A stretch of 64,000 nucleotides of DNA from Octopus sinensis (Eukaryota): contig NC_043002.1 in assembly GCF_006345805.1 (NCBI RefSeq), positions 42,470,001 to 42,534,000 on the forward strand. Direction: 5' to 3'. Shown here piece by piece: positions 1,545-61,695 of the stretch. The position numbers and the translations under genes are program-made. A model generated the notes under the pieces. It saw nothing but the letters and a program-made list of their open reading frames with translations, did no database searches and was not told the origin of the DNA. Within the stretch, counting starts at the first letter, position 1. Each line of letters starts with the position of its first letter.

Positions 1545-1860
<316 letters not shown>

Positions 1861-2145
1861 TTTCTATTTATTGTTACTGGAAGATATAGTATATTTGGGT
1901 TAATCCCAGTATTCACTCCTCCCCACAAAAAAAAAAATATGTAAAAAAGAAAATGTTGGAACATTTTACATATTGGATGGGATTAATTGCTTTTTTTCTA
2001 GATTTTGCCCTATGGACAATTTGAGCTCACCATTGTATGCTGACATGGGTCTCATCAGTTACACCCTGCACAAGAATATACAATAGTGAACTTTACCTAC
2101 CTATGATACTTATTTATAGCAATGTTGATTGGACCATTGTGATGA

Positions 2146-2190
<45 letters not shown>
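2146..2190. repeat. (ATT)n microsatellite
   Basis: Direct reading. Confidence 0.95.
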
Positions 2191-2192
<2 letters not shown>

Positions 2193-3473
2193 GAGCACAA
2201 ATCAATGCTTGTGGTAAGATATTAATAGCGCACACTTGACTGTTAAGTTCAATGCAGTGTTGACTTAGGTTGCTGCAATTCTCTATCTGAAAGCAGCTAA
2301 TGGAAGTAGAAAAAAATGTTGTTTGGCTATTCTCTAAATCTATTTGAAACAGCAAAAGTTATTCTAAAATGATATAAGAGAGAATATTATATAAAATGTG
2401 TGTTGATATGAGAGAGAGAGAGAGAAGTGGGAAGATTTTCAGATGACAAAAATTATTATTTTCATACATTTAGTGCCGAACAATGCAAGCTCATCATTGT
2501 CAAAATATGTTTCCATCATTTGAAAATATTAGTAATTCGAGGAAATAAAAATGGAATTTTCATGATTGCAGGCATATATTTGTGAAGTTTTCTGTTAATT
2601 ATTTTTAAGAATTTAATTGAATTTTCCTTTTTTTCTATGGATTGGAAGTGGGGGTGAGTGGAATAGATGATGGTGACGGAGGGTTGTTTATTGGTATGAA
2701 ATGCAATTAGCTCTTACATGACTATTTTCAACACCTTCCTCTGGCTATGAGGTGGTGGTAATGGCAGTGAGAAGGCTGAAATGCTCACTGATTCATTTTT
2801 CCCATTCCTCTCAATTCATGGTTCAGATTGTGCATGCATGCATGTGTGTGTGTGTATTCTGCATATATGTTCTGTTTTATTTAGCTATTCTAATTATTCG
2901 TGCATAACTCAATTTATACATATACACTCATTCAACATAGTTTTTTTTTTTTAATTATAATTTTTATTTTGCTATAATTTTTCCTTGATTAATTTTTATT
3001 GTATGTAATTTTTTTTCAAGTATTGTATGATGAAGTGGGAATGAGGTGAACTTGTTTATTAGAACATCTGCCTGTCTGATCAACATTTGCAATGTTACAG
3101 TTTCAATTGCTGCTATATTTGTCCTTCACATTCCACCATCTTCAAACTAAAGAAAGATTTTGGCTGTGTACTGACTGACTTTAGAATATGAAACCTGTCT
3201 AACATAATTTGCTTAATTATTTCTGTAATCCTGCTTTAAGGATGAAAATGTTAGAAGAGAAATGGTATGGTATTGTTATAGCTGTTTTGTTTCTTTAAAG
3301 AAACTCTTTTATATCAAAGAACTATAACTATTCTCACATAAAGATTGTTTGGTTTTACTTATTTACTTACTCCCTTAATTTAAACAATATTGTTATGCTT
3401 ATATTCATTTTGTTTTTGCTTTCTATCTCTTTCTTATTTCACAATTTTAACTTTATTTTCTCTTTCTTTCTAG

Positions 3474-4636
3474 ATTCCGATTCTGATGAAGTGGTAATTA
3501 TCGGCTCAGAAGGCTTAGATGATACAAATGACGGAGATGTTATCTTTGTATCACAGTACAAATCTTCTTCAGAACCCATTACCATAGATTGTACAACATC
3601 TAAAGAAGCAGAAAATGACAGTGCCAAAGTTGTTCATTTAAATGAAGAACAGCACTGTGAAATGGATGAAGATGATGTACAAGATATAAGTACTATTTCC
3701 TCAATTAAACTTGCAGACTTCTGTCAGCGTTCCAGTCAAATCTATAATGACGATAATGATCCCACAGATCAGCTTGTTATAAAGCCCCGTGACTCCCTTG
3801 GATCTTTAAGCATTGGTAATAACTTTGGTCTTTCTCTCTCGGTGGAAGAACACAATAAAACTCAATCAAAGCCAGTAATGGTTGTTGATGTTTCCCCAAG
3901 AATTGAAACTCCAATGGAAAATGATGGTGAGCCTTGTACTCATGAACTGAGTGTTTGTGATAAATGCATACCAGACAAAGAGGAAAATTCTGAATCTCGT
4001 ATGGATTTTAGGACTAATTTTGACAACACTGAGAATAAAGTGATCATGAAAAAAGAAGAAAATGTCTTGCCCCAAAACTCAGGAATTTGTAAATGGAATG
4101 TTGATGAGCCTGTTACGGATAATTGTTCTGGTCAAAAAGCCAGTGGTTTACAACTTCAAGAAGAAGAAGATAATGACACAAGTGTTACAATTACTCCTTG
4201 TAGCCAGACAGCTAATATGTTGTCATCAAAATATGATCCCTGCTGTTCTGATTCTTCATCAAATCCAAATCTTATTTATCATTGTATTAAAGAAAAGAAT
4301 GGCATCAGTGAACACCCTGTGGCTATGTGTCAAAAGCTGAAAACAAAATTCTGCCACTCTTCTGATCCTTCATCGCCAAACAATTCTCCGGATGTTACAT
4401 CGGTAATTGATCATGGCTCCCCTCGAAAGAAGCACATGTTAACTTCACGAACATGGATTCCAGCCTCTGTAATGGCAGAAGAGGATAATCAAAGAGCAGT
4501 AAAGAAAGGTGCTTGTGTAGCTTGCAAAGCACTGGTAAAAGAAGATGAAGGTTCATCTTGTGTTGATCACCATCTTACTTGTAGGGGATGTTTGGAGGAC
4601 AAAGTAAAAGCAGTTCTAAGTCGAAGATGTTTAGAG
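3474..4636 (+). CDS. Coding exon A: acidic/Ser-rich disordered region with SIM-like motifs, ending in the first six ligands of a RING (CVAC...CVDHH..CRGC)
   Basis: Lies within ORF 3395-4648. Polypyrimidine tract plus TAG acceptor at 3471-3473 (phase 1). Donor GAG|GTAAGT at 4636/4637 (phase 0). Confidence 0.88.
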
Positions 4637-20459: not shown

Positions 20460-22200
20460 AACAGTGAACGAAGTGCAAACAACTTTGGATGCAAGCTGTA
20501 CTGTAGGACCTTTGCAACTGAGGGGCTTGAAGATTGTAAGTAGAGGACAGGCCTTTATGGATGATGTGACACTTCTATTGACAGAGAAGCAAATCCTGCA
20601 GAGTGCCCTCTTGAGGCTAGATGAGTTTGTGAAGTGGTCAAGGATGTGATTGAGAGCAAAAAGTCACATAGTCTAAAATTTATTAAGGGAGTTCAAAAAG
20701 AAGTTAAGTTTAAAATAGCTGAAGAAAACATTCTAACAATCAAGGAAGAACCCGTCAAGAGCATGGGACGTGTATACACTTGAACATTGTCAGATAAGAG
20801 TCATAAGATGCAAATTGTAAAACAAGCCAAGGAAGGATTAACAGCAATCGATAACTCAAAGCTACCAGATAAATATAAAATACGATGCTTACAGTTTGGC
20901 TTGTATCTGCCCTTTCGTGTCCACTTTTAATAAATGAGGTGGCATTGTCACGAGTTCAAGTTATTGAACAAAAGTTTAATTTGTTCATTAGAAGGCAGTT
21001 AGGCCTGCCTCGTATATTGAACAGTTCAGCTCTCTATCATAAAACAGGCTCATTGCAGTTACCACTGGCATCAGTAGTCAAAATTTATAAACTAGGCAAG
21101 GTATGGACGGTGATGATACTAAGAGAATCAAAGGATATAGAAATCAGGCATAATTCACTAGATGTAAAAACAACCAGGAAGTGGAAAGCAAAGACTGATG
21201 TCATTCTGTCTTCACTTACACACCGAGATATGGTGGGTGCAATGCAAATTCATTGGAAGGGACTTGGATTTGATGCAGATCGGTTCAGACAGTTTGCAAG
21301 TATGATGCAGAGTGAATGCAGATCTGTTGTTAGCAAGTGTCAAAACAAGGGGAACAGAGAGAGGAGAGCTTCATTTGATCCAATATGCTTAACAAAGACA
21401 GATGATGAAATAGGAAGAACATGTTGAGAGAAAAATAAGTTGGAATGAGATCTGGAGGTGGACAATATCATGGCTAAGTTTTCTGATTCATTCATCTCAT
21501 GATGTCTTGTCATTGCCTACAAATCTAGTAAGATGGAACATCTCAGAAAATGATATATACAAATGCAGCAAAGTCAGAACACTGAAACATATTCTTTCCA
21601 ACTGTTCACTGGCATTGAACAGATATACATGGAAACACAATCTGGTCCTTAAGATTATCTTCAATGCTATAAAGAACCAAATTGCTCTCTTCAACAGTGA
21701 AAAAAAAAACCATTGAAAGTATCAAGCAGAGATTTCATTACTTTCATGCACTCAGGACGGCAGATCCATTTCAAGAAGAAACTTCCTTTGAGCAATGAAA
21801 AGTGGAACGGCTATTGGGAGGTGGCTGCAAATTGACCAAGGTGCCAAGGATTCTTTCCCATCCCAGTTGCGAAAAAAATGGATATTATAATGTGGTGTAA
21901 AAGAAAGTGGTAAATCTAGTTGAGTTAACTACTCCTCATGAAGATAACATGGATGCTGCTCAGGATTGAAAGATTGACCATTATGTAAACCTCCTTGAGG
22001 TATGTGAAGACACAGGCTGGAAAGTGGAGCATTTTCCAATCGAAGTCGGACGTAGAGGATTTGTTGGACACAGTGTGAGGCAACTGTTATTATCGTTGGA
22101 CCTATCTCATCGTAAAGCAAATACCACCATGAGCAATATCCAAACTACAGTGGAAAAGGCTAGCCACTGGATTTGGTTAAAAAGAGACAATGAGTGATGG
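20460..22200 (+). mobile_element. 5'-truncated, decayed non-LTR retrotransposon with C-terminal restriction-like endonuclease (R2 superclade, HERO-like)
   Basis: RT motif AFMDD at 20551-20565, then EEPVKSMG and thumb region (ORF 20885-21427). Zn-knuckle remnant CSKVRTLKHILSNC, and RLE motifs DIIMW, VVNLVELTTPHEDN and PIEVGRRGFVG. Several stops and frameshifts. Confidence 0.78.
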
Positions 22201-25599: not shown

Positions 25600-26003
25600 G
25601 GTGCAGGAGTGGCTGTGTGGTCAGTAGCTTGCTTACCAACCACATGGTTCTGGGTTCAGTCCCAGTGCATGGCACTTTGGGGAAGTGTCTTCTATTATAG
25701 CCTCAGGCCAACCAAAGCCTTGTGAATGGATTTGGTAGACGGAAACTGAAAGAAGCCCATCGTATATATGTATATATATATATATATATGTGTTTATGTG
25801 TCTGTGTTTGTCCCCCCCAACATCGCTTGACAACCGATGCTGGTGTGTTTACATCCCCATAACTTAGCAGTTCAGCAAAAGAGATCGATAGAATAAGTAC
25901 TAGGCTTACAAAGAATAAGTCCTGGTGTCGATTTGCTCGACTAAAGGTGGTGCTCCAGCATGGCCGCAGTCAAATGACTGAAACAAGTAAAAAGAGTAAA
26001 GAG
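25600..26003 (+). mobile_element. Full-length tRNA-derived SINE (family A)
   Basis: A-box-like tggctgtgtgg, B-box-like ggttcagtccc, central (TA)n and 3' gactgaaacaagtaaaa(a)gag. Highly similar to the copies at 33.3, 57.5 and 58.4 kb. Confidence 0.88.
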
Positions 26004-31394: not shown

Positions 31395-31443
31395 ACATCT
31401 GTAAAGTGCCTAGAAGCAGGCTGTAACAATTTCTATTCAAAAC
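31395..31443 (+). CDS. Coding exon B (49 nt): TSVKCLEAGCNNFYSK, supplies RING ligands 7-8
   Basis: tttttttcag| acceptor and C|GTATGT donor. Phase 0 to 1 fits both neighbours. The C-x4-C completes the RING begun in exon A. Confidence 0.85.
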
Positions 31444-32853: not shown

Positions 32854-33086
32854 ATGAACTGAGGCGTTGTTTGCCTGCAATGATAGTGGATATTCTTGAA
32901 GAAGTTCTTGAACAATATTATGTTGATTTCATAACAAATATGCTAATGAAATCCTATTCTCCAAGTGATACCTCTGTGGGGCCTGATAATGAAATGACTG
33001 TAGGAGAACTTGAACGTCCTCGAAAGCGGTTAGCAATCAGTTATGATAGCTTACCCGAAAACTGGGTTGAAATGGAATCAAAATTT
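32854..33086 (+). CDS. Coding exon C: post-RING helix (HELRRCLPAMI...) and linker to the pre-catalytic LPENWVEM motif
   Basis: ctattttccag| acceptor and TTT|GTAAGT donor. Overlaps ORF 32871-33098. Phase 1 to 0. Confidence 0.88.
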
Positions 33087-33322
33087 GTAAGTATTTGAAG
33101 AAATAAAACGCAAAAATATTTTTCTGACATTCAATAGTTGAAAACTTTAACCAATCGTTTCTTAAAACTTGTTCTTCATTTGAAATATTTAAAGCACATT
33201 CAGTTATTTATAGCCACCCAGTACCACTTAATTTTCATCTTTTATCAAATAGATTGGTTGTGTAAATTTATGAAATATAGCATGAATTAAGTAACCATTT
33301 TTATATATAAGTGTTCACAACA

Positions 33323-33702
33323 GACGTAGGAGTGGCTGTGTGGTAAGTACCTTGCTTACGAACCATATGGTTCTGGGTTCAGTCCCACTGCATGGCACCT
33401 TGGGCAAGTGTCTTCTACTATAGCCTCGGGCCAACCAAAGCCTTGTGAGTGGACTTGGTAGTCGGAAACTGAAAGAAGCCTGTCGTATATATGTATATAT
33501 ATATATATATGTGTGTGTATGTTTCTGTGTCTGTATTTGTTCCCCCAACATCACTTGGCAACCGATGCTGGTGTGTTTACATCCCCGTAACTTTGCGGTT
33601 AGGCTTACAAAGAATAAGTCCTGGGGTCGATTTGCTCGACTAAAGGCGGTGCTCCAGCACAGCCACAGTCAAATGACTGAAACAAGTAAAAGAGTAAAGA
33701 GT
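33323..33702 (+). mobile_element. tRNA-derived SINE (family A) with an internal ~30-bp deletion
   Basis: Same sequence as 58404-58788 but lacks the cggcaaaagagaccgatagaataagtact segment. Confidence 0.88.
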
Positions 33703-34130
33703 AACAAATCCCTTCAGCCATGATTTACTTGTCTTGGATTCTACTGTATGACTACTTCTTAGAGAATCAAAGTTTGTTTTATGTTGCAAGTATAAAAATG
33801 ACACTATGGTTAAATTGTTGTCCTCAACAGAAGCTGATTCCCTACAAACTTTGAGCAGCTTTTTAAAATTGTGTTGATTTTTGTAAATCATAATACATGG
33901 CAGTAAGAATTAAAATTTTCATGCGGTAAAGATAAAGGGGGGAAAAAACATTAGCTCAGTGACTGGTGCAATTAGTCATTGAGCTAATATTGTCTTTCCT
34001 CACTGCATAATTATTTTTAATTTGCTTCATGTTAGCACTAACTTAACTATTGTTTTTCATGCAGATGGTCTCTTAGTTATATATTTCTTTAAAGAAATAA
34101 CTGTAATAACTGTTCCTTTTGTTTTTTCAG

Positions 34131-34276
34131 AGTAATCAGCTATTCGTTCTGGATTCTGATTCTCAAGAATATGTCAATGTGTCTAGAATGTTTTTGTCTT
34201 CAATGCATTATCCAGCCACTGAAATAGTACGAATCTCTCGAATCCAAAATCCTATTTTATGGAAATATTACTGCTT
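34131..34276 (+). CDS. Coding exon D: start of PARP catalytic domain (SQEYVNVSRMF...IVRISRIQNPILWKYY)
   Basis: gttttttcag| acceptor and TT|GTAAGT donor. Typical EY..V...F and I.RIQN..LW..Y pattern of PARP7/11/12/14-type domains. Confidence 0.9.
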
Positions 34277-35269: not shown

Positions 35270-36600
35270 GGCGCTGCATAAGAACACCCAGTAAACTTTG
35301 TAAAGTGGTTGGTGTTGAGGACATTCAGCCAAACAAATCATGCCAAAACAAACATGAAACCTAGGTAGCTCATCAGCTGACCAGCTTCTGTTAAACCATC
35401 CAACTCATGCCAGCGTGGAAAACGGACATTAAATGATGATAATGATAATTATTTTCTCTACTATTTGCAAAAAACAAAAAAAAAAAACTTTTTCTTTTTC
35501 ATTTTACAGAAAAAAACGTGAGATGGTACAAGAGAACGATGGTCTTAATGTTGAAGAAAGACAACTATTCCATGGTACAAAAAGCAAAGTGGTTGAACCT
35601 ATATGTCGTAAGGGATTTGACTGGAGGCTCTGTGGAAAACATGGTACTGTTTATGGACATGGTAAGTAGCTTTTATTGTGTGCTGCATTATAACTTTTAT
35701 CTAAATAACATAAAAAGTAGGAGACATGAAATATGTCAAAAAGGATTCAGAAAAATTAATTTTTTATACCCAAAGAATGGTTTGAACATTGTTTAAACCC
35801 TTTTATTTAATCTACTCAATTGAAGGCATCGTGTTTGTCCAGTACAATTTGATTGAAAAAAAAATGAAATTTTTTTGTTTAAAAATATTGGTCCATTGAT
35901 TTTCTCATCTAAAAATTTCTACAAAAGACACACACACACACAATGTCATGAGAAATTACTAAGCATATTCTGAAAAGTGGTTAGTATTGGGAAAGGTAGA
36001 AACCATGCCAAAGCAGACATAGCAGTATGATGTAGTCCTCCAACTTGTTGATCCATCCAACCCATGCCAATATGGAGAGTAGGCATTGATTGACAATGAT
36101 GATAATGATCATCATCATCATTGATTTTATGTCTACCCTTCCATGCTGGTAGGACTTTTTGAGGATTACAACTCTATTAGTCACCCCTTACAACATGCTG
36201 GTATGTTGTGCATATTCAGTAAGGTGATTAGCATTGAGACGGGTATTCAGTTGTAGAATAGTATCTATTCTAAAAATTGGGATACAATTACCAGATGAGG
36301 TTTGAGCCTGGTGCAGCCTCCTGGCTTGCCAGTTCCCAGTCAAACCGTGCAACCTATGCCAGCATGAAAAACAGATGTTAAACAATGATGATGACAATCA
36401 TAGATGCACACACATGTACAGTGGGTTGTTACACTGTTTCTTTCAACCAAATTTTATTTACAAGGCATTGATTAGAAGGGTATCCAACTTTAGAAACCAT
36501 GCCAAAACAGACAACAGAGCTTGGCACAGTCCTCCAGCTTGCCAGCTCTAGTTAAATCATCCAACCCAGCATAGAGAACAAACATTAAATGACGACGATT
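35270..36600. mobile_element. Cluster of short RTE-3'-tail-derived interspersed repeats
   Basis: At least four degenerate copies (about 35270-35445, 35980-36150, 36230-36400, 36470-36600) of the ...ccatccaacccatgccagcatggaaa...ttaaatgatgat tail. Further copies at about 11220, 26060, 29180 and 46430. Confidence 0.6.
35510..35661 (+). CDS. Coding exon E: PARP NAD-binding His motif and D-loop (ERQLFHGT...ICRKGFDWRLCGKHGTVYGH)
   Basis: attttacag| acceptor and G|GTAAGT donor. His at 35571-35573. Overlaps ORF 35433-35669. Confidence 0.93.
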
Positions 36601-38903: not shown

Positions 38904-39093
38904 AAACGACAAAACAATATGATTTGCACATACATAGACAGCTTATACTTCTGTGCCACTATAATCTTAGGGAAAATATTGCAAAAAGCAATAGAGTGTA
39001 TTGAGATAATGTAAAATTCACTTAGATTTACTACATTTCTATTTTTCACTTTTAATTGTATCCTCTTTTCATTTTTTTTCTTTTTCATTGTAG

Positions 39094-41063
39094 GCTCCTA
39101 CTTTGCGGGCGAGGCTTCATACTCTCATCAATTTACTGATGACATTCGTATTAAGCGGCAGCGTCCAATTCCAGCTGGTCGTGTTAGTTCTAACAACATT
39201 GCAATGACCACTAAAGTCTTCTGCAATCCTTACAATAAAAATGCTTTCCTCAAGTTGAGTCCAAGTATTAATATTCCAAGTATGAACCCAGCTGCACCAC
39301 TGCAATTAACAGGCTATACAAGTTCAGTGACCACCTATACTGCTCAAGGAAGCATAATGGCCAGTTCTAGTAACAACCCATTTGTTAGTCAAGCTTTATT
39401 AGGAGCTGCACCTCCTGGAGCTGGATCAAATATATGTTGTCCGACTATCAAAGCTACTAACAATCCAAACACTGCTGTAAACAGAGTACCGTCTAATCGC
39501 ATAAACATTGTCATGATGCCAATGACAGATGCAGACAAGAACCAAACTGTTCAGAATATGCCTAATATGCAAGACACTTCATCAGTTGGCATTGCTCCTA
39601 ATGTCCCATCATCTTCTTCATCTTCAACACCCTCATCATCATCTTCATATTCATTACAAAATTTGACTGTATCCTTTCCTTCCAGTGGTAATGTTGGCCC
39701 TACTGTAACTGCTAACAATACAGTTATGCAGTCTCCGCTTGTGCTGTCAACAGCCCCTAAACAGCTAGTACACCAACAACTGCAGACAGTGCCAGTGACT
39801 AGCACACCTCAACATATCCCTCTGGTTGTACCCTTCCAGGCAGGAACTGCTGTTAATCCCAAAAGCCATTTGGCTTCACACTCACACTCTAAATTAATCT
39901 TTGGAGGATTGTCACAACCACAACAGCAAATGCAACAACAGCAACAACAACAACAGCAGCAGCAGCAGCAAAAATACCTTCTGCAGCGCATCACACAACG
40001 ACTTCAAACACAACCCACACAACGACTGCAGGCACAAGCAACACAACGACTCCAGCAACCAGCGATACCATCGCAGGCGCTGCAGTCACAGCAACTCTCA
40101 CAAGCTCAACAGCCATTATTGCAATTGCAGGCTGTGCAACAACTACAACCATCACCGCAATTACAGACTGCTGCACAAGTTCCACAGTTAGCCCAACCGC
40201 AACATCATCAGCAACCACAGCAAGTTGGGCCAACACTGCAACAGGTCACATCAACTTCAGCACCTCAGCTGATAACACTTGGAGAATTTTTGTCCCCTTT
40301 TCAAACAGGAGCTTCGGCAGCTAAAGTTAACATGGTGTCTCACACCCAGCCGAAACTTGTTTTTGGAAGAGTGCCATCTCAACAACAATCTCAGCAACAG
40401 CAGCCTCAGCAACAAGTAATGGCCCAGCAAGCTGGTGTACCTCCACAGAACCAACCCCAAGCCCCACCCCAGCATATACAAGCTGCACAACAAACACCAC
40501 ATCATTTACATCACTATCACCATCACCACCATCACCACCACCATCACCAAGCCCCAGTGCAACCACAGCAGCAACCCCAACAAATATTCCTGCGGAAAGG
40601 TTTTGTTGTGCCCATTCCACCAGGAACTTCTGGTCCTAAAGTCAGCACTGTTGGCCATTCACAATCCAAACTAATAGTGAAAGTACCACCAGCACCACCA
40701 GCACCATCCCAACAACAACAGCTGGTCCCACAGACCCAGCCTCAGCCCCCTACCCCACAAGCAATCCAGGCTCAACAGACAGCAAACACACTCCAACTCT
40801 ACTGCCAAAATGGAGAACCCCATACGACACGGACCTCAATACCTACAAACTGCACGCGGAAAATGTTCATTGCCAAAGTTCTCGTGGGCAAGTACACAGG
40901 TGGTAACAGCAGCCTGAAGAAAGCCCCACCTTTATATCCATGTGCCGAACCATTTGGAAAATGCTATGACTCTTGTGTAGACAACATATGGGACCCAAAG
41001 ATTTTTGTTATATTTGATAGTGCCCAAGCTTACCCCGATTATTTAATAGAATATGTTGTATAG
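39094..41063 (+). CDS. Terminal coding exon F: GSYFA...ASYSHQF, ~570-aa Q/P/H-rich insert, then the rest of the PARP domain (KMFIAKVLVG...YDSCVDN..DPKIFVIFDSAQAYPDYLIEY)
   Basis: tttttcattgtag| acceptor at 39093. The frame is open from 39096, runs into ORF 39204-41063 and ends at TAG. Confidence 0.92.
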
Positions 41064-44815: not shown

Positions 44816-45434
44816 ATATATATATATAAAGTGTGTGTGTGTGTGTGCTTATATATAGTGAATTCTTTATACAATTCATATTTCACACTACTATGATCTT
44901 AATGTGAATTAACTTTTACAATATTCCTAGCTGATTTTATATCCATTGAAGTTGGTTCATTTTTTGGTCACTTTCTAAATATTATTTTGTCCAAGTGGTG
45001 TTTATAATTGTTGTCACTTTTCGTTTGCCAATTCATTGGTTGTTCCATTGTCATTGGTCAAATTCACCATTTTATTGGTCTATATGAACTTTTACTTTTT
45101 AATCATTGTCATATTGTCAGTTTTCATTGTCCAATTCGGTGGTTGTCTTATTCCCTACCTGCCAATTTCATCACTGTAACCAGCAAATTGGAGCAAAAGG
45201 AAAAGCAACTACACTCATAAACACAACCTTAAAAAAAGAATATTTAGAAGCTGGCTAGGACTTAGAAATTCAAAATAATGAATGTTTATCAATAAATATA
45301 AAACCAACTTAAAAATATTGTAAAACTGTTCATCATAAGATTGTGCTGGTGTGAAATTAAAGTTGCAATTAAAAGAATTCAGTTTAAATATACTATACAC
45401 TCTACACTCCTTCAGTGACAAACTTTAGCATTTG

Positions 45435-46064
45435 AACATACATACATACATACCTCCACACATACAACATATATATATGTGTGTATGTATATATATATAT
45501 GTGTGTATGTATATATATATATATGTGTGTATGTATATATATATATATATATGTGTATGTATATATATATATATATATATATGTGTGTATGTATATATAT
45601 ATATATATGTGTATTATATATATATATATATATGTGTATATATATATATATATATTGTGTATATATATATATATATATATGTGTATATATATATATATAT
45701 GTGTTATATATATATATGTGTATATATATATATGTGTATATATATATATATGTGTATATATATATATGTGTATATATATATATATGTGTATATATATATA
45801 TGTGTATATATATATATATATGTATGTATGTATGTGTATATGTATGTATGTATGTATGTATGTGTATGTATGTATGTGTATGTATGTATGTGTATGTATG
45901 TATGTGTATATATATATATGTATGTATATATATATGTATGTATATATATATATGTATGTGTATATATATATGTATGTGTATATATATATGTATGTGTATA
46001 TATATATGTGTATATATATATGTATGTATATATATATATGTATGTATGTATATATGTATGTATG

Positions 46065-46100
<36 letters not shown>

Positions 46101-46421
46101 TGTATGTATATATATATGTATGTATATATATATGTATGTATGTATATATATGTATGTATGTATATATATGTATGTATGTATGCATATGTATGTATATATA
46201 TATATGTATGTATATATATATATGTATGTATATATATATATGTATGTATATATATATAATATGTATGTATATATATATATATGTATATATATATAATATA
46301 TATGTATGTATATATAATATATATGTATGTATGTATATATATATATATATATGTATGTATATATATATATATGTATGTATATATATATATATGTATGTAT
46401 ATATATATATATATATATATA
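45435..46421. repeat. ~1-kb compound (TA)n/(TG)n/(TATG)n microsatellite
   Basis: Direct reading. Source of the ORFs 45412-46480. Confidence 0.97.
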
Positions 46422-48053
46422 ATATCATTGATTTAATGTCCAGTTTAACATGCTTGCATGGGTCAGATGGGATTTGTTGAGGTAAAGTTTTTTTACAATC
46501 AGATGCCCTTCCTGTTGCTAACTCTTGTTTTCAAACAAGGTAATATTTCCCAATGACTGGACATGTTTCCATGGAAGACTGAAAATGAATGACACCACTT
46601 ACTTGATAGTGACACTTGTTAACAAACTCATGTCAAGATGAGGAGGTACAAAGATACATACATATAATATTGCATGAATTTCTTCAGGGAGAAAACTGAC
46701 TAAAATTTTAAATAGTTTAGTTTAGTGTTAACAACAAGAATCTACAGTAATCATAGAGCAAGATAAATTTATAGTCTATACTGGTTTTATTTCACATACA
46801 AAGTACTTAAATTTTTACTAGCCATTTGCTCGTCAATTCTATCAACTTAATGTATTTTGTTGCTGAAAGCTTGCTGGAGTAAAATGCAAGAATACGAATT
46901 TATCTATTTGTGTGTGTATATTTTACTCGTAAATTATTGTAACATCAGCTCTTGTATTTTCATAAATATTTAGTAACACGAGTAAACCTGAGCCTATTTG
47001 CTCTGCTATCTCTTAATACCACACTAAGTTTAATAATTAATGAGAGCCTAAATATTAATGACTGGTTAGGAATGTTATACAAGTTGAATCCTCTGCTAGG
47101 TTTAGAATTTGACAATTTGCCTCCAACTTGACTATTTAAAAGCCAGTCCAAACTACCTGGTGACATTGACATCATTTTAACAATTACAAACCATAGTAAA
47201 CAGAAGATTGCACAAATTACTAAAGTTGTTAACAGTTGGTAGTGTTGAATCTGGTACTGAAAATAAAATATTTAAATTTGTTCATATTTTCCTTGTCATT
47301 CCTTCTAAGAAAATATTAAATTTAACAACTTATTTGTGAGCTTTTCATTCCTTAACTGAGCTGTAACTGCCATGTTACTTTCTTTATCTACATAATTTGT
47401 TTAATTAAGTTGGAATTGGCACATGATGTAATTTATCTGACTTATTATAATTCTTTACACCCACTCCTTTTTAAGAATTTGCCAAATTTTTTTCTTTCAA
47501 CTTGCAATGTAAACACAACTCAAATGTATGCATACTGCCTTGTTTAAAGTTTCTGCCCCCCCCCCATAAATTCCCCTATGCAACCACACAATTTTATTTT
47601 AAAGTAAGTGTTAGTACATACATATACACAGAGCTTCCTCTTCTCTTTCCCTATTTATAAACACACACACACACACACTCACAAGCATACACTTAACATA
47701 TATAAATACATTCCAAAGATGAATTTTTTTTCTTTCTTTATAATTACTCCAAACAACTAGGTCCAAAATAGTAAGGGGAACTGCGCAACATTTAAAATTA
47801 AAAGAAAACAAAAAAAAAATTATCAAAAAAGAAGCTTCTGTCTTGTACAGAGTGAAACTAAAAGAACTTCTGGTATTGCATATTGCAATTATGTGTGCCA
47901 CTTGCAAACTTTTTCTTCTTTTATAATTCTGAACTTTTTGTTTTATTTATATTATATTGTGTGCCAATTAGTGATCATTTATGCACACAACACACGTAAA
48001 TGATATCTTGTGAATTCAAATCATTAAATTTTTTTCCTCTCTCTGTAACTACA

Positions 48054-52300: not shown

Positions 52301-53159
52301 TGCAGGTAATATGGCTGATAAATTAATTACTTTCACATTCTTTAAAAAATATTGTTAAAAAAAAAGTAAAGCTCAATGTTGAAAGGAAGAAACTAATCTA
52401 GAGTTAAATATAACAAGTGCCTATGCTGTTTTATTCTGAAGTACAAATTTCTATTGAAGAGAAAACCTTGTTATTATGACAAACAAAAGATTATTTAGAT
52501 AAGACATTCTAGTTTAACTTTTAATTGAACAGATATGGTAAAACTGGACTGTATCAAATAAGTGTATGAAGAAGTTTTCTGTAGCCAAGATATCTGAATA
52601 GTTTGATTACACAAGGATAATATCGACAGCTAAACAAATGAAACCTTACACAGTATTGGATTAAGAGTATGGCATGTAATATGTACAGACTTGAAAATAC
52701 AAGTTAATTAGCTTTTGGTTTTTCCATCTCTGTCTCAGTGGTTAAGAACAGATAAAGTCATTAAATTACAAGCTAGATAGCCTGTACATGTAGTCAGATG
52801 TTCTCTGCCCACAATGATTATGATAAGATAATACACTTGTTGTTTTGTTGCGATGCAATTTGCAAAGTAAATGTAAAAGATTGAGAGGTGACTATAAAAA
52901 CCATTTCAGTTGCCAGGCACCATTAAAATACAATAAATATTTTGGATTTTTTGTAGACCTTATCACCATAGTTTGATTTTGGGAAGTTAAATTCATGCAA
53001 AACCAATGGATAAACAATTCAAATGCAGAGTATGTTAAACTGTCCGAATGCTGATAAGTAGCTACAGGGAAGTTTAAAAATTCTGTTTTAAAAGTTTTCA
53101 GGTTAAATCAGTTGAGTTGTATGTACACACACAGCATGATTAAGGGATCATACATTCTA

Positions 53160-54650
53160 TGTTTATTTCTCTAGAAGTAGTTGATAGCTTCCGTTATTTT
53201 GGTGACCAAGTCAGTAGTGGGGGTGGGTGTGCTGAAAGTGTAACGGCTAGAGTAAGAATAGCCTGGGCAAAGTTTAGGGAGCTCTTACCTCTGTTGGTGA
53301 CTAAAGGCCTCTCGCTCAGAGTAAAAGGCAGACTGTATGATGCATGTGTACGAACAGCCATGCTACATGGCAGTGAAACATGGGCCGTGACTACTGAGGA
53401 CATGCGTAAGCTCGTGAGAAATGAAGCTAGTATGCTCCGTTGGATGTGTAATGTCAGTGTTAATAGTCGACAGAGTGTAAGTACCTTGAGAGAAAAGTTG
53501 GACCTAAGAGGCATCAGATGTTGTGTGCAAGAGAGACGATTGCGCTGGTATGGTCATGTGGTGAGAATGGATGAAGATAGGTGTGTGAAAAGGTGCCACA
53601 CCCTGGCAGTTGAGGGGACCTGTGGAAGAGGTAGACCCAGGAAAACCTGGGTCGAGGTGGTGAAGCACGACCTTCGAACTCTAGGTCTCACCAAGGAAAT
53701 GACCAGAGACCGAGACCTATGGAAGTATGCTGTGCGTGAGAAGACCCGGCAAGACCAGTGAGAACAATCAAAATCAAATCATATATCAGAAAGCAGGGGT
53801 TAAGTGACCCATCCGTTCGTGTCCGCTGTCAGCCTCGTCTGGCACCCGTGCCGGTGATACGTAGAAGCACCATTCACTCGTGGCCGTTTGCCAGCTCTGC
53901 CTGGCCTCCGTGTCGGTGGCACGTAAAAGCACCATCCGTTCGTGTCCGTTGCCAGCTACGGCTGGCCCCCATGCCAGTGACACGTAAAAGCACCGTCCGT
54001 TCGTGGCCGTTTGCCAGCTCTGTCTGGCAACCGTGTCGGTGGCACGTAAAAGCACCATCCGTTCACGTCCGTTGCCAGCCTCGGCTGGCCCCCGTGCCGG
54101 TGACACGTAAAAGCACCGTCCGTTCGTGGCCGTTTGCCAGCTCTGTCTGGCCCCGTGCCGGTGACACGTAAAAGCACCATCCGTTCGTGGCCGTTTGCCA
54201 GCTCTGTCTGGCAACCGTGTCGGTGGCACGTAAAAGCACCATCCGTTCGCGTCCGTTGCCAGCCTCAGCTGGCCCCCGTGCCGGTGACACGTAAAAGCAC
54301 CGTCCGTTCGTGGCCGTTTGCCAGCTCTGTCTGGCCCCGTGTCGGTGGCATGTAAAAGCACCATCCGTTCGTGTCCGTTGCCAGCATCGCCTGGCCCCGT
54401 GCCGGTGACACGTAAAAGCACCATCCGTTCGTGGCCGTTTGCCAGCTCTGTCTGGCACCTGTGCAGGTGGCACGTAAAAAACACCCACTACACTCGCGGA
54501 GTGGTTGGCGTTAGGAAGGGCATCCAGCCGTAGAAACACTGCCAGATTTGACTGGGCCTGACGAAGCCTTCCAGCTTCACAGACCCCAGTTGACCCATCC
54601 AACCCATGCTAGCATGGAAAGCGGACGCTAAATGATGATGATGATGATAC
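53160..54650 (+). mobile_element. Relatively young 5'-truncated RTE LINE: intact C-terminal 200-aa ORF segment, 61-bp minisatellite in the 3' UTR, (ATG)n tail
   Basis: ORF 53159-53761 (FRYFGDQ...LHGSETWAVT...RRLRWYGHVVRM...GRGRPRKTW) is typical of RTE ORF C-termini. The tail ends gatgatgatgatgat at about 54648. Confidence 0.92.
53810..54485 (+). repeat. GC-rich 60-62-bp minisatellite, ~11 copies, two alternating variants
   Basis: gta(a/g)aagcacc recurs at 53861, 53923, 53984, 54046, 54107, 54168, 54230, 54291, 54352, 54412 and 54474. Confidence 0.95.
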
Positions 54651-56430: not shown

Positions 56431-57474
56431 ACCTACTCATGAGAATGAAATCAACAGAAGCTTTTCACACCTTCCTTAAAGTTTTGATAACTTTTCTCAC
56501 AAGAATTAGGTATTCTTCAATTTTGCCTATTCATACAAACCAGGGGAAAAAAAATGAAAATTCTTTCAGAATGGTGAAAGAAGAACATGCTAATATACTA
56601 AAGGTTACCAGTCTTTCACATCAAGCAATATCTACTTTGCACTTCCAATAAGTTGGAATATTCAGAATACATGTACAGAAAACAACATCGAACCACACTG
56701 TGTAATAGACAATGAATCTGGAATGGTAAGAACTAGAACACTGAAGCAGGCAATGATTTTGATGAAATCTACAAATATAGTGAGAAAATGTGTTAGATTG
56801 ATGATTTTAGCTTCTACTTAGCTTCAACTGAATTTTTACTAGAACCTGTCAGCAGAAACTGAATTGGCTTTTGTCATACATTTTAAAATAATATTAAGAC
56901 CAGAGGTTGAGTTGATTAAAGGTATTGATTTGTGTGGAAACACCTATTAACACGTTATTAGAAACACTGATCAAGTGGTTAAGACATGTAACTAAAACCC
57001 TTCTCTTTCCAAAGACTAAGTCCTTTGTTGATGATGGAATGTGAAGCTATCCACAGAAGCCAAGTAATAAGGGAGTTGAAATGAGTTGTGGGCACAAGTT
57101 GCACACTGAAAACTAGCTTATTTGTATGGGGTATCTTAAATACAAATGGTATTACAACAAATGATCCAACTCTCAATGCCTTCCTTATAGTCTAGTGGAA
57201 AACTATGCAACTCATACAAAATTTAATCATAGTTTAACTCTTGATACTAACTCGGGACCACCTCTCATTCTCTGGTACCAACTCTCTGTTTTAAAGTGAT
57301 CTAAATTAAAAGTTTCAAATTTTCAAGTTAATTCATGTTCCAAACAATGTTCCAGCACAATTATGACTGCCATTTTACTAAATTCTTCATAACTTTCAAA
57401 ATTAATTGAAACAAAAGTAGTATATTTCAACAAAATATGGTAACAAAATGTTTAAGGAAGATCTAGAGAGAACC

Positions 57475-57873
57475 TTTCTTTTATTCTTTTATTTGTTTCA
57501 GTCATTTGACTGCGACCATGGTGGATCATCACCTTTAGTTGAGCAAATCGACCCCAGGACTTATTCTTTGTAAGTCTAGTCCTTATTCTCTCAGTCTCTC
57601 CTGCTGAACCGTTAAGTGATGGGGACATAAACACACCAGCATCGGTTGTCAAGCGATGTTGGGGGGACAACACAGATACACAAACATATACATACATATA
57701 TATATTATATATGACCAGCTTCTTTTGTTTCCGTCTACCAAATCCACTCACAAGACTTTGGTCGGCCCGAGGCTATAGTAGAAGACACTTGCCTAAGGTG
57801 CCACGCAGTAGGACTAAACCCAGAACCATGTGGTTGGTAAGCAAGCTACTTAGCACACAGCCACTCCTGTGCC
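57475..57873 (-). mobile_element. tRNA-derived SINE (family A), minus strand
   Basis: Reverse complement of the 58404-58788 copy. Confidence 0.88.
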
Positions 57874-58403
57874 TATACCTATCAATGTTATTATCAAAGA
57901 TGTGACAAAGACTCAATGTTAATAAGTTTATAGTCTAATAATTGCATATGTTAATCATCATACATAATAATTTCTTGCATAAGGCCATCAATTTTTGTAG
58001 GGAAAGCATATGGTTGATTGCATTAACCTCTCTACTTACAATTTCTTAACTGGCTAGCAGTATTTAATTTCAGTCTACAATCCTATGCATAATGAGTTCA
58101 AATTCCACCAAGATCGACTATACTATTCATCCTTTCAAAGTCAAATAAATAAAGTACCTTTCAATTATTACGATTGATTTAAATTCCTGCAATGCATCCC
58201 TAGATGAAAATGGAAAATATAACAGAAGAGAAGCTGCGAGATCAAAGTTAATCTCACTCAGAACATTGAACATGCACGTTTGGGCATCCAGCTTGTCACT
58301 TTGTTTCAAGTTTAAGTTTCAAACACATACAGACGCACAGCAACATTTCCAACACAGTTCTCTTGATATCAATACTAACAACATAAAAATTATAAAGGAA
58401 AAA

Positions 58404-58788
58404 GTAGGAGTGGCTGTGTGGTAAGTAGCTTGCTTATGAACCACATGGTTCCAGGTTCAGTCCCACTGCATGGCACCTTGAGCAAGTGTCTTCTACTATA
58501 GCTTCGGGCTGACCAAAGCCTTGTGAGTGGATTTGGTAGACGGAAACTGAAAGAAGCCTTCGTATATATGTATGTGTGTGTGTATTCGTTGTGTGTCTGT
58601 GTTTGTCCCCCCAACATCGCTTGACAACCGATGCTGGTGTGTTTACGTCCCCGTAACTTAGCGGTTCGGCAAAAGAGACCGATAGAATAAGTACTAGGCT
58701 TACAAAGAATAAGTCCTGGGTCGATTTGCTCGACTAAAGGCTGTGCTCCAGCATGGCCACAGTCAAATGACTGAAACAAGTAAAAGAG
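58404..58788 (+). mobile_element. tRNA-derived SINE (family A), full length
   Basis: gtaggagtggctgtgtggtaagtagcttgc...gactgaaacaagtaaaagag. Confidence 0.9.
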
Positions 58789-61695
58789 AATGTTTGTTTA
58801 GTTGTTTTATTTGGCTGAATCATTTCCAGTGGCAACAAGAAACATCAGTTTTAAACATTTAATACATAATACATCAAAATTTATCCCTGCATACCTTCAT
58901 TTTGAGTTGTTTTTTTCTTTTTTTGACCAAGAACATATTTCTCCTATTTTCACATCTTACCAGACGATCGCTTTCCCATTTTCTTTTTCAACATTGATCT
59001 GAAAACCTTCGTTTCGTATTTCTCGATATATAGTTTGTATTACGCATTATTTTTACTTAATACTTAATTTTAAAAAATAAATACGAAAATTAATTTAATG
59101 TTTTTTTCTAAATTAGAAATAAGCAATAAAAAAACTTATAGTGATAAGAAATATGAGCGAGTCTATATTCACACGTCAATACAGTCATCCGAATTCCACA
59201 ACACTATAAAATGACAGCATTCCGATTATAGCAATTCAATTAAACACTGTTAACGTTTTCGTTACGCCTATCAGTTTTCCATAGAAGAAAAAAAACTCTT
59301 TGGTATTCTTTCGTTACAAACAGCTAGTGTACCTTGGACAACAAAATGCAGTTCCCTCTTTTTAAAGATGGTAGATATAATTTCAAGGAGATTAGGATTG
59401 TTGTTTCTAGCAGAGTATATTAAGAGTACTTATTCTATCGATATTAACGACAGCTTTTATTTTCTCCAGTTTAGAAGTCGTGTGTCACTAGATTCTGTTT
59501 AAAAGTTACATAGCGTCTTGTTTCGTACAAAATGAATTATAAATGATTCACCGAATTAAAAAAATTTATGGAAGATTTAATAAAATCCAAAATCCAATGA
59601 AATTCGTTACTGTGTGTATAGGAAATAATTCAATCAATTTGAGGTCTCGATAAGAGCAAGGAAGAGTGTATAAAGAACTTCGAGGAATGTCACTCGGAAA
59701 ATGGTTGTTGGATATCAGCTTCAAGTATCGGGAACCTTTACCTAAGTATGGAAATAATCATTAATCCAATGAGTTTTCATTGTTAAAAAAAAAAGGTTTA
59801 ATTCTCTTAAAACTATGTTGGCTATGTGTTATTCGACGGACGGATGAGCGCATATAGCGTAAGTCAACGTAGCGACCCAGCACTAACGAAACATTTATCG
59901 ATTTTACTATGCCCAATTTGTATTTTCCCCTGACGATAGATGAACAAGTTCATGAAAAATTGAACTGAGTAGTAACATTATATGAACCGCTGGTTTTTAC
60001 AAGCTCGTAATATGTAATACAGGTAGTAAACAAAAATAAAATTGAACAGAGTGGTGACATTTAGTTGAGATGACCTGGAAGTTGTTGCTCTTCGATTACT
60101 ATCGCAAACAGTAGTAGCTTTCTTCAAGTGAATACAAGTCGTTGATTGGTAAAAATTACCCAAATACGACAACTTTAACACGAAATAACTTCTAAAATAC
60201 GAAATTTTGTCAAAAATGTTGAAAGTAAACCGTGTTCAGCATGAGAAATTACACCAGCATACGAAGTTTCAATAAAAAAAATCTGTGAGCGAAACTGAAC
60301 AGATCCCTTTCTAGATATATGATACCATTATTCAATGTATTCTTCCTATGAGCCACAGAAAGAAGCCTGTTGGTGATTGCTTGACCTGGTGGAAATAGGA
60401 GACAACTTTCCCTCAAATCACGTCAGACCAATGCATTCGATTAAAAATTGTACAAGGTGGAGCCCCAGCACGGTCACAGTCTAATTATTAAAAAACAAGT
60501 AAAAGATAAATGATACTCTTCTAAAAATCTGCTTTTTTATGCTTAACATGTTCAGAAATTAAAATCCTTGTACTCTAAATAGATAGTTGGGCGATGATCA
60601 AAACTTCTGTTATCAGTGCCTGAAAACAATGTCCGTCTGACGGTGTGTAGATAATGGTATAGACTATCTTTGGAAAACGTGGGTACGTAGAATGGTGCAC
60701 TGAAATGGCTCAACCGAGATTCCGGTTTATTTAATTCCTACTCTGTTCACAAGGAACTGAGTATCAGTGGGCTCTAACATACTTGATTTAGTGAACCGCA
60801 AAAATTTTATTAAAATCATACACTGCGGTCTGAGAAAAAGTTATTATCTAAGTGACCAATTCCTGAGCAAAAAAAAAAAAAAAAGCAGCGGAAACAGACC
60901 TGGGATGGATTTTTTCAGTTTGGTTGCTAGCGCCTCCAAAAATTAAAGCTTACCGAAATTTTTTAATTCGACACAATAATACACTTGTCCAAACTAAATT
61001 GCTGGAGTAATTTCATTTTTTTTTCTGGAAAATATTTTAAAATAGTTACAGAGGTTTAAAGTTTGATCATTTTTCATCCAGTCAAGAAATAGGGTTTGGA
61101 AGCTGTCATTTTGTGCGTGACAGCACATTTTGTCGTCAACAATCTGAAAATAGCATGTAATTTTCTTTCATGTAAATAAATGTTTGTGTTAATTTAAAAG
61201 ATTTATCCAAGAAATCTTATTTAGCAGTTATTTTTAGCACACTTCACAACCACCTCAATGCTCAATGAAAGAAAGAAACCATAATAAAAACGAAGTTACA
61301 GGAGTTTGCTGCTATAATCACACAGAACACAGCGTCAAATTTGTCAACACGTACTTCCTCGAAGATAAAAGATTTTTCAAAGACTGCTGCCAACACATAC
61401 TTCATTGCAGATAAATGACGTTTCAAAGACTGTTACTACGGCAACAAGCAAAAGAGTTCTTATGTTCCGCTTCTTACTATTGAAACAGCCATGAATGTGT
61501 CTGTGGCTTAAGATGGCTAGAATTACCAAAATTTTCAAACTTTAATTACTGGTAACTCTTAACTTACTGATTTATAGAGAAAATTACTTTCATGTCATTA
61601 ATTAGCCGATAAAAGTATATTATTACACTGAATATGAAATCAATTTGAACGAAAAAATGACGCTGGCAACCAAACAGAAAAGATCCTCTGAGGAT

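What the first reader, a model, noticed from the sequence alone, without database searches (positions are those of the whole stretch)
39094..41063. PARP catalytic domain split by a ~570-aa in-frame polyQ/polyH/Pro-rich insertion
Seen in sequence: the conserved PARP motifs run in order FHGT (exon E), GSYFAGEASYSHQFTD (39093/39094-39140), then 572 codons of low-complexity sequence (39141-40856). They resume at RKMFIAKVLVGKY...YDSCVDN...IFVIFD..QAYPDYLIEY. The insert has no stop codon and lies inside one exon, whereas the AT-rich introns of this gene close frames quickly. Established knowledge: in PARP7/PARP12 only a short loop joins the YS helix to the MFxAxVL strand, and PARP11 and PARP6/8 carry inserts of a few tens of residues there. 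A ~570-aa insert is far larger. Inference: the fold may still assemble around a giant disordered loop, placing a condensate-forming, prion-like region inside the enzyme domain. Alternatively the insert is an exitron removed in some isoforms.
Basis: partly seen in the sequence, partly recalled or inferred. Interest (0 to 1): 0.92.

Follow-up and report, generated by a model that had tools for sequence, protein, structure and literature searches.

The report
PARP enzyme domain split by giant loop
The last exon of this mollusc gene really does encode a PARP12-like ADP-ribosyltransferase domain interrupted by 572 low-complexity residues, but this is the extreme case of an old, unnamed lophotrochozoan PARP family that all carry a variable disordered insert in that same loop.

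Summary
One exon (39094-41063, +) encodes GSYFAGEASYSHQFTD, then 572 stop-free codons (39141-40856), then the C-terminal third of a PARP catalytic domain. The other five frames carry 22-35 stops, and shuffles average 25.

I rebuilt six exons of the gene (3474-41063, 1236 aa). With the insert removed, the domain matches a PARP12/TIPARP/ZAP profile end to end.

The insert is not unique. About 55 relatives from gastropods, bivalves, a chiton and an annelid carry a low-complexity insert of 59-399 residues at the same loop. Canonical PARP12/TIPARP/ZAP have 9-10 residues there. These relatives form one clade (SH-aLRT 98).

Transcript-sized contigs and RefSeq models keep the insert. An AlphaFold model of an oyster orthologue with a 350-residue insert packs both halves into one ART fold (TM 0.92 to human PARP12), with the insert disordered.

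The window's insert is the longest seen. It holds polyQ and polyH runs and a triplicated ~35-residue motif not found in other species. Exitron splicing is neither shown nor excluded. The condensate idea is untested. No cephalopod relatives were retrievable.

The parts
3474..4636 (+). Exon 2 (phase-1 start). It encodes the acidic N-terminal region with two SIM-like motifs (SDSDEVVII, DGDVIFV) and the first half of a Cys/His zinc-binding module (CxxC...CxxxHHxxCxxC).
   Evidence: AG/GT boundaries and an open frame. tblastn with mollusc orthologues. Weak zf-RING_14 match, E=0.08, below the Pfam cut-off.
31395..31443 (+). Exon 3, a 49-nt micro-exon encoding TSVKCLEAGCNNFYSK plus one base. This is the second half of the zinc-binding module.
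   Evidence: Found by motif search in the 28-kb intron. It has AG/GTATGT boundaries, its phase links exons 2 and 4, and its length matches the orthologues' CxxxxCxSYYPxSELK.
32854..33086 (+). Exon 4, the helical linker running up to the 'LPENWxxM' entry of the PARP domain.
   Evidence: tblastn E down to 3e-9. Boundaries.
34131..34276 (+). Exon 5, the start of the catalytic domain (…RIQNPILWKYYCL).
   Evidence: tblastn E about 1e-10. Boundaries.
35510..35661 (+). Exon 6, carrying the catalytic His (LFHGT), GFDWR and CGKHGTVYGH. It ends in phase 1.
   Evidence: Pfam PARP 31.2 bits against a 26.7 cut-off, profile positions 46-84. tblastn E about 1e-21. Sequence.
39094..39140 (+). Start of exon 7: (G)SYFAGEASYSHQFTD, the catalytic Tyr strand and the Ser-Tyr helix.
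39141..40856 (+). The 572-codon in-frame low-complexity insert (Q/P/S/T-rich, basic, almost no acidic residues).
   Evidence: No stops against about 25 expected. No Pfam domain. Unique in the genome apart from microsatellite tracts. Homologous in position to the 59-399-residue inserts of relatives.
39819..39926 (+). Copy 1 of a ~35-residue motif (..VVPFQAGT..K..L.SHSHSKLIFG..).
   Evidence: Pairwise local scores of 51-62 against a shuffle mean of 19-20, sd 4, max 44.
39914..39971 (+). PolyQ tract (QQQMQ followed by 12 more Q) encoded by mixed CAA/CAG codons.
40284..40388 (+). Copy 2 of the ~35-residue motif.
40509..40549 (+). PolyH tract (HHLHHY then 10 H) encoded by mixed CAC/CAT codons.
40599..40703 (+). 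Copy 3 of the ~35-residue motif.
40857..41063 (+). C-terminal third of the catalytic domain (RKMFIAKVLVGKYTGG…YDSCVDN…PKIFVIFD…QAYPDYLIEY) plus the stop codon.
   Evidence: phmmer against PDB gives PARP12 8XPX/2PQF/6V3W at E=4.7e-14. Pfam PARP profile positions 161-197. tblastn E down to 2e-32.

Best explanation
The window holds a single-copy gene for a protein of at least 1236 residues. It belongs to an unnamed, ancient lophotrochozoan PARP family, not to PARP12 or TIPARP proper.

The architecture, from N to C terminus, is: an acidic region with SIM-like motifs; a RING-like Cys/His zinc module; a helical linker; and a PARP12-like mono-ADP-ribosyltransferase domain with the H-Y-I signature. 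In that domain the short surface loop (9-10 residues in PARP12/TIPARP/ZAP) between the Ser-Tyr helix and the central MFxAxVL strand has been replaced by an intrinsically disordered segment.

The segment is translated as part of the last exon. The two halves of the domain fold together as a normal ART fold and the segment projects from it as a loop. Loop length drifts widely between lineages, from 59 to 399 residues in the relatives. In this genome it has grown to 572 residues through glutamine and histidine tracts and a threefold duplication of a ~35-residue motif.

What is shown: the coding status, the position of the insert, its homology of position across the family, its retention in other species' transcripts, and the predicted fold in an orthologue. 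What is inferred: that the octopus-type protein folds and is active in the same way, and that the loop acts as a docking, regulatory or localisation region.
For: The frame is open against expectation. The six-exon model has all AG/GT boundaries and one continuous frame. The profile of 80 canonical domains gives one domain of 230.9 bits without the insert, and two abutting pieces with it (positions 4-131 at 142 bits and 134-199 at 79.6 bits).

The motif-to-motif gap is 9-10 residues in canonical PARP12/TIPARP/ZAP, 59-399 in about 55 relatives, and 576 here. The annelid Owenia has about 361 residues at the same site. On a tree built without the insert columns, all insert-bearing sequences form one clade (SH-aLRT 98) and the window's protein nests among molluscs (95).

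Genomic single-ORF fragments from bivalves start at the same acceptor, just before GSYFA. Contigs of 3.0-4.9 kb that encode 904-1323 residues, and so must be cDNA-like, keep the insert. The AlphaFold model of oyster P0009 has both halves at pLDDT above 90 and the insert below 50. Foldseek gives TM 0.92 to PARP12 2PQF over 530 alignment columns. The gene is single-copy and the insert is not repeat-derived.
Against: No transcript evidence is available for this species. No cephalopod relative could be retrieved, so when the expansion happened is unknown.

The fold was predicted for an orthologue with a 350-residue insert, not for the 572-residue protein of the window. The single-sequence AlphaFold run on the window's exon was uninformative: even the genuine C-terminal half scored pLDDT below 50.

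Enzymatic activity has not been tested in any family member. One deposited Lymnaea model removes the homologous segment as an intron. Exon 1 was not found.
Confidence: 0.8

Rival explanations
1. Exitron. All or part of the insert is an intron inside the coding exon, removed in frame in some or most transcripts, so the working enzyme has a short loop.
For: The deposited Lymnaea stagnalis model P0086 leaves only 17 residues at the site. The genomic sequence L011:9456-10595 is nonetheless one open in-frame ORF of 379 codons, so that model uses an in-frame GT...AG inside the exon. In the window there are a few weak in-frame GT/AG pairs, for example 39280 to 40308, 1029 nt.
Against: No internal GT in the window's insert matches the donor consensus at 7 of 9 positions or better, whereas four of the five real donors of this gene do. 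Only two internal AGs have a good pyrimidine tract. Transcript-sized contigs from at least seven other species and the RefSeq isoforms of Biomphalaria keep the insert. An open frame kept over 572 codons, and over 59-399 codons in relatives, implies that the segment is translated. The Lymnaea model may simply be a gene-predictor choice.
Confidence: 0.15
2. Decayed enzyme. The insertion has wrecked the ART fold and the protein survives for its N-terminal zinc-finger/SIM functions only. The PARP halves would be relics or a pseudo-enzyme.
For: No activity data exist for any family member. The ART domain is interrupted close to the NAD-binding Ser-Tyr helix.
Against: Both halves are strongly conserved: up to 65% identity to Haliotis over 189 insert-free columns and 72-77% in the C-terminal piece. 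The catalytic His, Tyr, Ser-Tyr and the Ile position are kept. The split state has persisted since before the mollusc-annelid divergence. AlphaFold packs the halves confidently in an orthologue.
Confidence: 0.1
3. Artefact. The open frame is a chance product of CAA/CAG/CAC microsatellites, a misassembly, or a retained intron wrongly read as exon.
For: The segment contains trinucleotide-repeat tracts that also occur elsewhere in the genome.
Against: The repeat tracts cover only about 150 of the 1716 nt. The rest is unique sequence, yet it has no stop where 22-35 occur in every other frame. The same exon layout, with an in-frame insert, is seen in independent genomes.
Confidence: 0.02

Closest known systems
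Human PARP12 (ARTD12) catalytic domain, PDB 2PQF / 6V3W / 8XPX
   Same: It is the best solved-structure match for the C-terminal piece (E=4.7e-14) and for the orthologue model (TM 0.92). It shares the motifs FHGT, GxYFA, SYS, MFLAxVLVG, YDSCV and IFVIF..Q.YPEY. It has the same H-Y-I type signature expected of mono-ADP-ribosyltransferases.
   Different: PARP12 has 9 residues where this protein has 576 by the same measure. PARP12 carries CCCH zinc fingers and WWE domains, and this family has neither. Pfam finds only the PARP domain plus a sub-threshold RING-like match. On the tree the family is a separate clade, and molluscs and Owenia also have ordinary PARP12-like genes.
TIPARP / PARP7
   Same: Similar catalytic motifs. 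Some database entries of the family are auto-named 'PARP7S'.
   Different: TIPARP has a 10-residue loop, a CCCH finger and a WWE domain, and it falls in the canonical clade.
Unnamed lophotrochozoan 'uncharacterized protein' family (e.g. Haliotis, Mizuhopecten LOC110441771, Saccostrea LOC133186799, Biomphalaria LOC106060478, Owenia fusiformis)
   Same: Same architecture, and the same exon boundary just before GSYFA where genomic fragments were seen. The insert sits at the same site and has a similar acid-poor, S/P/Q-rich make-up. The window's gene is a member of this family.
   Different: Their inserts are 59-399 residues. Fourteen of 56 carry a PxPAH motif that the window lacks. The window alone has the long polyQ/polyH runs and the triplicated ~35-residue motif.
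Split accessory domains of human PARPs (RWD in PARP6/8, KH in PARP9/10/14; Suskiewicz et al. 2023, PMC10450202)
   Same: These domains are contiguous in structure but interrupted in sequence by long, mostly disordered insertions. Sequence methods detect them only after the insertion is removed. The same behaviour was seen here with Pfam and with my own profile.
   Different: In those cases the split domain is an accessory domain. Here it is the catalytic ART domain itself.

Membership tests
PARP / ARTD catalytic domain (Pfam PF00644) | Match to the family profile above the curated threshold | tested here: met
   Exon 6 alone scores 31.2 bits against the 26.7 cut-off. Exon 7 alone scores 24.5 bits and the C-terminal piece 23.4 bits, both just under. 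The spliced protein scores 215.9 bits against a profile of 80 canonical domains, and 230.9 bits with the insert removed. Orthologues score 75-90 bits on Pfam.
PARP / ARTD catalytic domain (Pfam PF00644) | H-Y-[E/I/L/Y] NAD-binding signature in order (His in xHGT, Tyr in GxYFA, third residue in the strand before Q.YP.Y) | tested here: met
   The window has FHGT, GSYFA and PKIFVIF. The last aligns to PARP12 PSIFVIF. That this Ile column is the triad position rests on established knowledge of PARP1 E988 and the PARP10/12 Ile, not on a test made here.
PARP / ARTD catalytic domain (Pfam PF00644) | A single compact ART fold | tested here: inconclusive
   Met for the oyster orthologue P0009 (TM 0.92 to 2PQF). 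The single-sequence run on exon 7 was uninformative.
PARP / ARTD catalytic domain (Pfam PF00644) | NAD+-dependent ADP-ribosyl transfer | not testable with these tools
   This needs a biochemical assay.
PARP12 / TIPARP / ZAP subfamily | CCCH zinc fingers and a WWE domain N-terminal to the catalytic domain | tested here: not met
   Canonical hits carry PF02825, PF23466 and PF25261 among others. Family members carry only PF00644. The window's upstream exons encode a CxxC...HHxxCxxC...CxxxxC module instead.
PARP12 / TIPARP / ZAP subfamily | Groups with those proteins on a tree of the catalytic domain | tested here: not met
   It forms a separate clade, with SH-aLRT 98 on each side.
Lophotrochozoan split-ART PARP family (unnamed) | Low-complexity insert between the SYSHxY(T/S)D helix and the MFxAxVLVG strand, the RING-like Cys/His module, and acidic SIM-like N-terminal motifs | tested here: met
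Exitron | Internal GT-AG segment of a coding exon, length a multiple of three, open frame, with both spliced and unspliced mRNAs observed | tested here: inconclusive
   The open frame and the length condition are trivially met. The splice signals are weak. No RNA data exist for this species. One spliced gene model exists in Lymnaea.
Prion-like / condensate-forming low-complexity domain | Q/N-rich composition recognised by a prion-domain predictor, and demonstrated phase separation | not tested
   Only the composition is known: Q 19%, N 5%, a polyQ tract with 13 consecutive Q and a 10-residue polyH run. No predictor or assay was available.

The most novel reading that the evidence does not exclude
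The disordered segment inside the catalytic domain is a functional module that has been kept at one loop for more than half a billion years. It could be a tether for substrates or partners, or an auto-modification or localisation platform sitting beside the active site. Its length and content would then be tuned lineage by lineage. In this cephalopod-like genome it has acquired polyQ and polyH tracts and a triplicated basic/hydrophobic motif, which would give the enzyme a new localisation (for example nuclear speckles or condensates) or a new regulation. Together with the SIM-like motifs and the RING-like module, this would define an undescribed class of enzyme linking SUMO/ubiquitin and ADP-ribosylation.
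Probability: 0.3. Interest if true: 0.75.

Novelty: new variant of a known kind. Interest (0 to 1): 0.55.

Why it matters
Catalytic ART domains of PARPs are treated as compact units of about 200 residues. In the human family, long disordered insertions are described only in accessory domains (RWD, KH).

Here a whole animal clade keeps a PARP whose catalytic domain is split by a hypervariable disordered segment of 59-576 residues at one fixed loop. If the enzyme is active, this is a natural series for asking how much disorder an ART fold tolerates, and what a loop next to the NAD site can contribute, such as recruitment, auto-modification or condensation.

There is also a practical consequence. 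Such genes are missed or mis-modelled by domain searches and gene predictors: Pfam sees only half the domain, and one deposited model splices the segment out.

Tried and rejected
1. Cephalopod orthologues. Two word-indexed searches and one exhaustive HMMER search of 1.84 billion representatives returned no protein similar to the insert and no cephalopod entry. The expansion therefore could not be dated.

2. Exon 1. A search for the family's N-terminal motif (M...P-I/V-I/L-I) found nothing convincing in window 1-3473 or in 20 kb upstream.

3. Single-sequence AlphaFold of the window's exon 7. Mean pLDDT was 35.7, and even the true PARP strands scored below 50. It says nothing about disorder except for a polyQ helix.

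4. Transposon or repeat origin of the insert: rejected. Only the CAA/CAG, CAC/CAT and Ser-codon tracts recur in the genome.

5. The top hit of the exhaustive search (P0150) is an unrelated triple-PARP tandem protein, not an orthologue.

6. The triplicated motif was searched for in all retrieved proteins with a small HMM, with no significant hit.

7. P0162 looked like a spliced isoform of Dreissena P0017. It is a diverged paralogue or a different species with a shortened insert, not an isoform.

8. Three literature searches found no description of this family or of a split ART domain.

9. MAFFT alignment A3 misplaced the window's first 16 residues and was not used.

Full report
**Observation**

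The frame 39015-41063 (+) is open from stop to stop. A pyrimidine-rich tract ends in AG at 39092-39093, so the exon begins at 39094 with a Gly codon split G|GC. It encodes GSYFAGEASYSHQFTD (39093-39140), then 572 codons without a stop (39141-40856), then RKMFIAKVLVGKYTGG…YDSCVDN…PKIFVIFD…QAYPDYLIEY, with the stop codon at 41061-41063.

The other five frames of the 1716-nt segment contain 22-35 stops. In 2000 shuffles the reading frame held a mean of 24.9 stops and never fewer than 10. GC content rises to 0.40-0.51 in the segment, against about 0.3 in the flanking introns.

**Gene model**

I used tblastn with mollusc relatives and then read the splice sites. This gave six exons:
- 3474-4636
- 31395-31443 (a 49-nt micro-exon)
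- 32854-33086
- 34131-34276
- 35510-35661
- 39094-41063

All six have AG/GT boundaries and compatible phases. Together they read as one open frame of 1236 residues, of which the insert is 46%. A first exon carrying the start codon was not found in the window or in 20 kb upstream. The genome is 2.72 Gb and the gene is single-copy; the next best match to the C-terminal piece is 49% identical.

**Which enzyme it is**

The C-terminal piece matches human PARP12 catalytic-domain structures best (8XPX, 2PQF, 6V3W; E=4.7e-14). Exon 6 alone passes the Pfam PARP threshold (31.2 bits against 26.7; profile positions 46-84). The C-terminal piece maps to profile positions 161-197.

I built a profile from 80 canonical PARP12/TIPARP/ZAP catalytic domains. 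With the insert deleted, the spliced protein matches it as one domain (positions 4-199 of 209, 230.9 bits). With the insert present, it matches as two abutting pieces, positions 4-131 and 134-199.

So the insert replaces the short loop between the Ser-Tyr helix and the central MFxAxVL strand. The His, the Tyr and the Ile-type third position are all in place. By established knowledge of the family, that signature belongs to mono-ADP-ribosyltransferases.

**The insert is a family trait**

The closest database proteins are unnamed proteins of about 900-1190 residues. They come from Haliotis, Gigantopelta, Patella, Batillaria, Biomphalaria, Bulinus, Bradybaena, scallops, oysters, mussels, unionids, Mya, Mactra, Solemya, a chiton, and the annelid Owenia. 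Pfam finds only the N-terminal half of a PARP domain in them.

I measured the distance between the GxYFA…Y motif and the MFxAxVLxG motif. It is 9-10 residues in well over 100 PARP12/TIPARP/ZAP sequences, 59-399 in about 55 relatives, and 576 in the window's protein. Owenia has about 361.

I then built a tree from the catalytic domain with the insert left out. All 39 insert-bearing sequences, plus one Lymnaea model discussed below, form one clade (SH-aLRT 98). This clade is separate from PARP12/TIPARP/ZAP (98). The window's protein nests in the mollusc part of the clade (95). Mya and Owenia also have ordinary PARP12-like genes with short loops, which fall in the canonical clade. The family is therefore a distinct paralogue, and the insertion site is at least as old as the mollusc-annelid split.

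The inserts share a make-up: S/P/Q/T-rich, few acidic residues, usually a basic cluster right after …YTD. Fourteen of 56 carry a PxPAH motif. Otherwise they do not align with one another. Length goes down as well as up, for example 187 against 33 residues in two related bivalve sequences.

**Is the insert translated?**

Several relatives are ORFs called on genomic contigs that begin at the same acceptor, just before GSYFA, and run through the insert to the stop (P0151, P0153, P0158, P0184). The single-exon layout is therefore shared.

Seven relatives of 904-1323 residues sit on contigs of only 3.0-4.9 kb (P0007, P0008, P0011, P0013, P0016, P0190, P0235). A multi-exon gene cannot fit that space in genomic DNA, so I take these contigs to be transcript assemblies. 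All of them keep the insert (82-317 residues). The Biomphalaria RefSeq isoforms keep 353 residues.

There is one exception, the deposited Lymnaea stagnalis model, which leaves 17 residues. The genomic sequence there (L011:9456-10595) is nonetheless one in-frame ORF of 379 codons. That model therefore treats the segment as an in-frame intron. This is either a predictor artefact or a real exitron, and I cannot tell which.

In the window, none of the 67 internal GT sites matches the donor consensus at 7 of 9 positions or better, whereas four of the gene's five real donors do. Only two internal AGs have a strong pyrimidine tract. Only weak in-frame pairs exist.

**Fold**

I ran AlphaFold2 on the oyster orthologue P0009 (1007 residues, 350-residue insert) with a 69-sequence alignment. 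The results by region were:
- zinc module and helices (residues ~335-430): pLDDT above 90
- first part of the PARP domain (460-595): pLDDT above 90
- last part of the PARP domain (930-1007): pLDDT above 90
- residues 596-910, the insert: pLDDT below 50

Foldseek aligns the model to PARP12 2PQF_B with a TM-score of 0.92, normalised to the target, over 530 columns that span the insert. The two halves are therefore placed as one ART fold.

A single-sequence run on exon 7 was uninformative.

**What is particular to this genome**

The insert is 1.4 times the longest seen elsewhere. It contains:
- a polyQ tract with 13 consecutive Q, encoded by mixed CAA and CAG codons
- a 10-residue polyH run, encoded by mixed CAC and CAT codons
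- three copies of a ~35-residue motif (…P-F/I-x-x-G-x-S…K-V…H-S/T-Q-S/P-K-L-I/V…), whose pairwise scores lie 8-10 standard deviations above shuffles; this motif was not found in any other retrieved protein

Apart from the microsatellite tracts, the DNA is unique in the genome. So the insert is not a transposon.

**Interpretation**

The best-supported reading is a real, translated, disordered loop inside an otherwise intact mono-ART domain. It was inherited from an old lophotrochozoan family and enlarged here by tract growth and internal duplication.

Its function is inferred only. A surface tether for partners or substrates, an auto-modification region and a localisation signal are all possible. 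From general knowledge, His tracts are associated with nuclear speckles and Q-rich tracts with self-association. Nothing here tests those ideas.

The rivals are an exitron (about 0.15), a decayed enzyme (about 0.1) and an artefact (about 0.02).

**Comparison with what is known**

A survey of human PARP domains describes split RWD and KH domains with long disordered insertions, but no split ART domain (PMC10450202). Three full-text searches found no description of this family.

I rate the finding as a new variant of a known kind. It is still notable because the catalytic domain itself is split and the site has been held for so long.

Noticed in passing
window 3474-3560 (exon 2 start); the same region in all relatives: The N-termini of the whole family carry two or three SUMO-interaction-like motifs, which are V/I quartets flanked by acidic/Ser runs (in the window SDSDEVVII and DGDVIFV). 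Nineteen of 31 full-length relatives also have an exact PLDLS, a CtBP-binding-type motif; the window's protein lacks it. Combined with the RING-like module, this recalls SUMO-targeted ubiquitin ligases.
   Followed up: partly
window 4490-4636, 31395-31443, 32854-32900: A conserved Cys/His zinc-binding module (CxxC…C..HHxxCxxC…CxxxxC) is split over three exons. It gives only a sub-threshold Pfam zf-RING_14 match (E=0.08). It is predicted with pLDDT above 90 in the oyster orthologue. Its fold class was not identified.
   Followed up: partly
L011:9456-10595 (Lymnaea stagnalis GCA_964033795.1, CAXITT010000192.1): The deposited gene model removes about 285 codons of an uninterrupted in-frame ORF as an intron. 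This is either an annotation artefact or an exitron.
   Followed up: yes
window 20400-21720 (+), inside the 28-kb intron, and 53144-53761 (+): These are open frames resembling reverse-transcriptase/LINE C-terminal regions. They are probably decayed retroelement fragments.
   Followed up: no
window 25633-25969, 33315-33723, 57452-57905, 58390-58797: There are four copies of a short interspersed repeat, recognisable by the same pseudo-translation in the ORF lists. One copy lies in the intron between exons 4 and 5.
   Followed up: no
window 45402-46530: A microsatellite block of about 1.1 kb (TA/CA-type, reading as [10 protein letters not shown] in all frames). Similar shorter blocks lie at 1500-1900.
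   Followed up: no
window 53740-54610: A tandem array whose unit is roughly 30 codons, open on both strands, lies next to the LINE-like fragment.
   Followed up: no
relatives P0210 (Biomphalaria) and P0184: Other lineages grew their inserts by their own tandem repeats (NPIQNVQQGLSSQ units in Biomphalaria, GGQPAHP units in P0184). Expansion by internal repetition therefore recurs in the family.
   Followed up: partly
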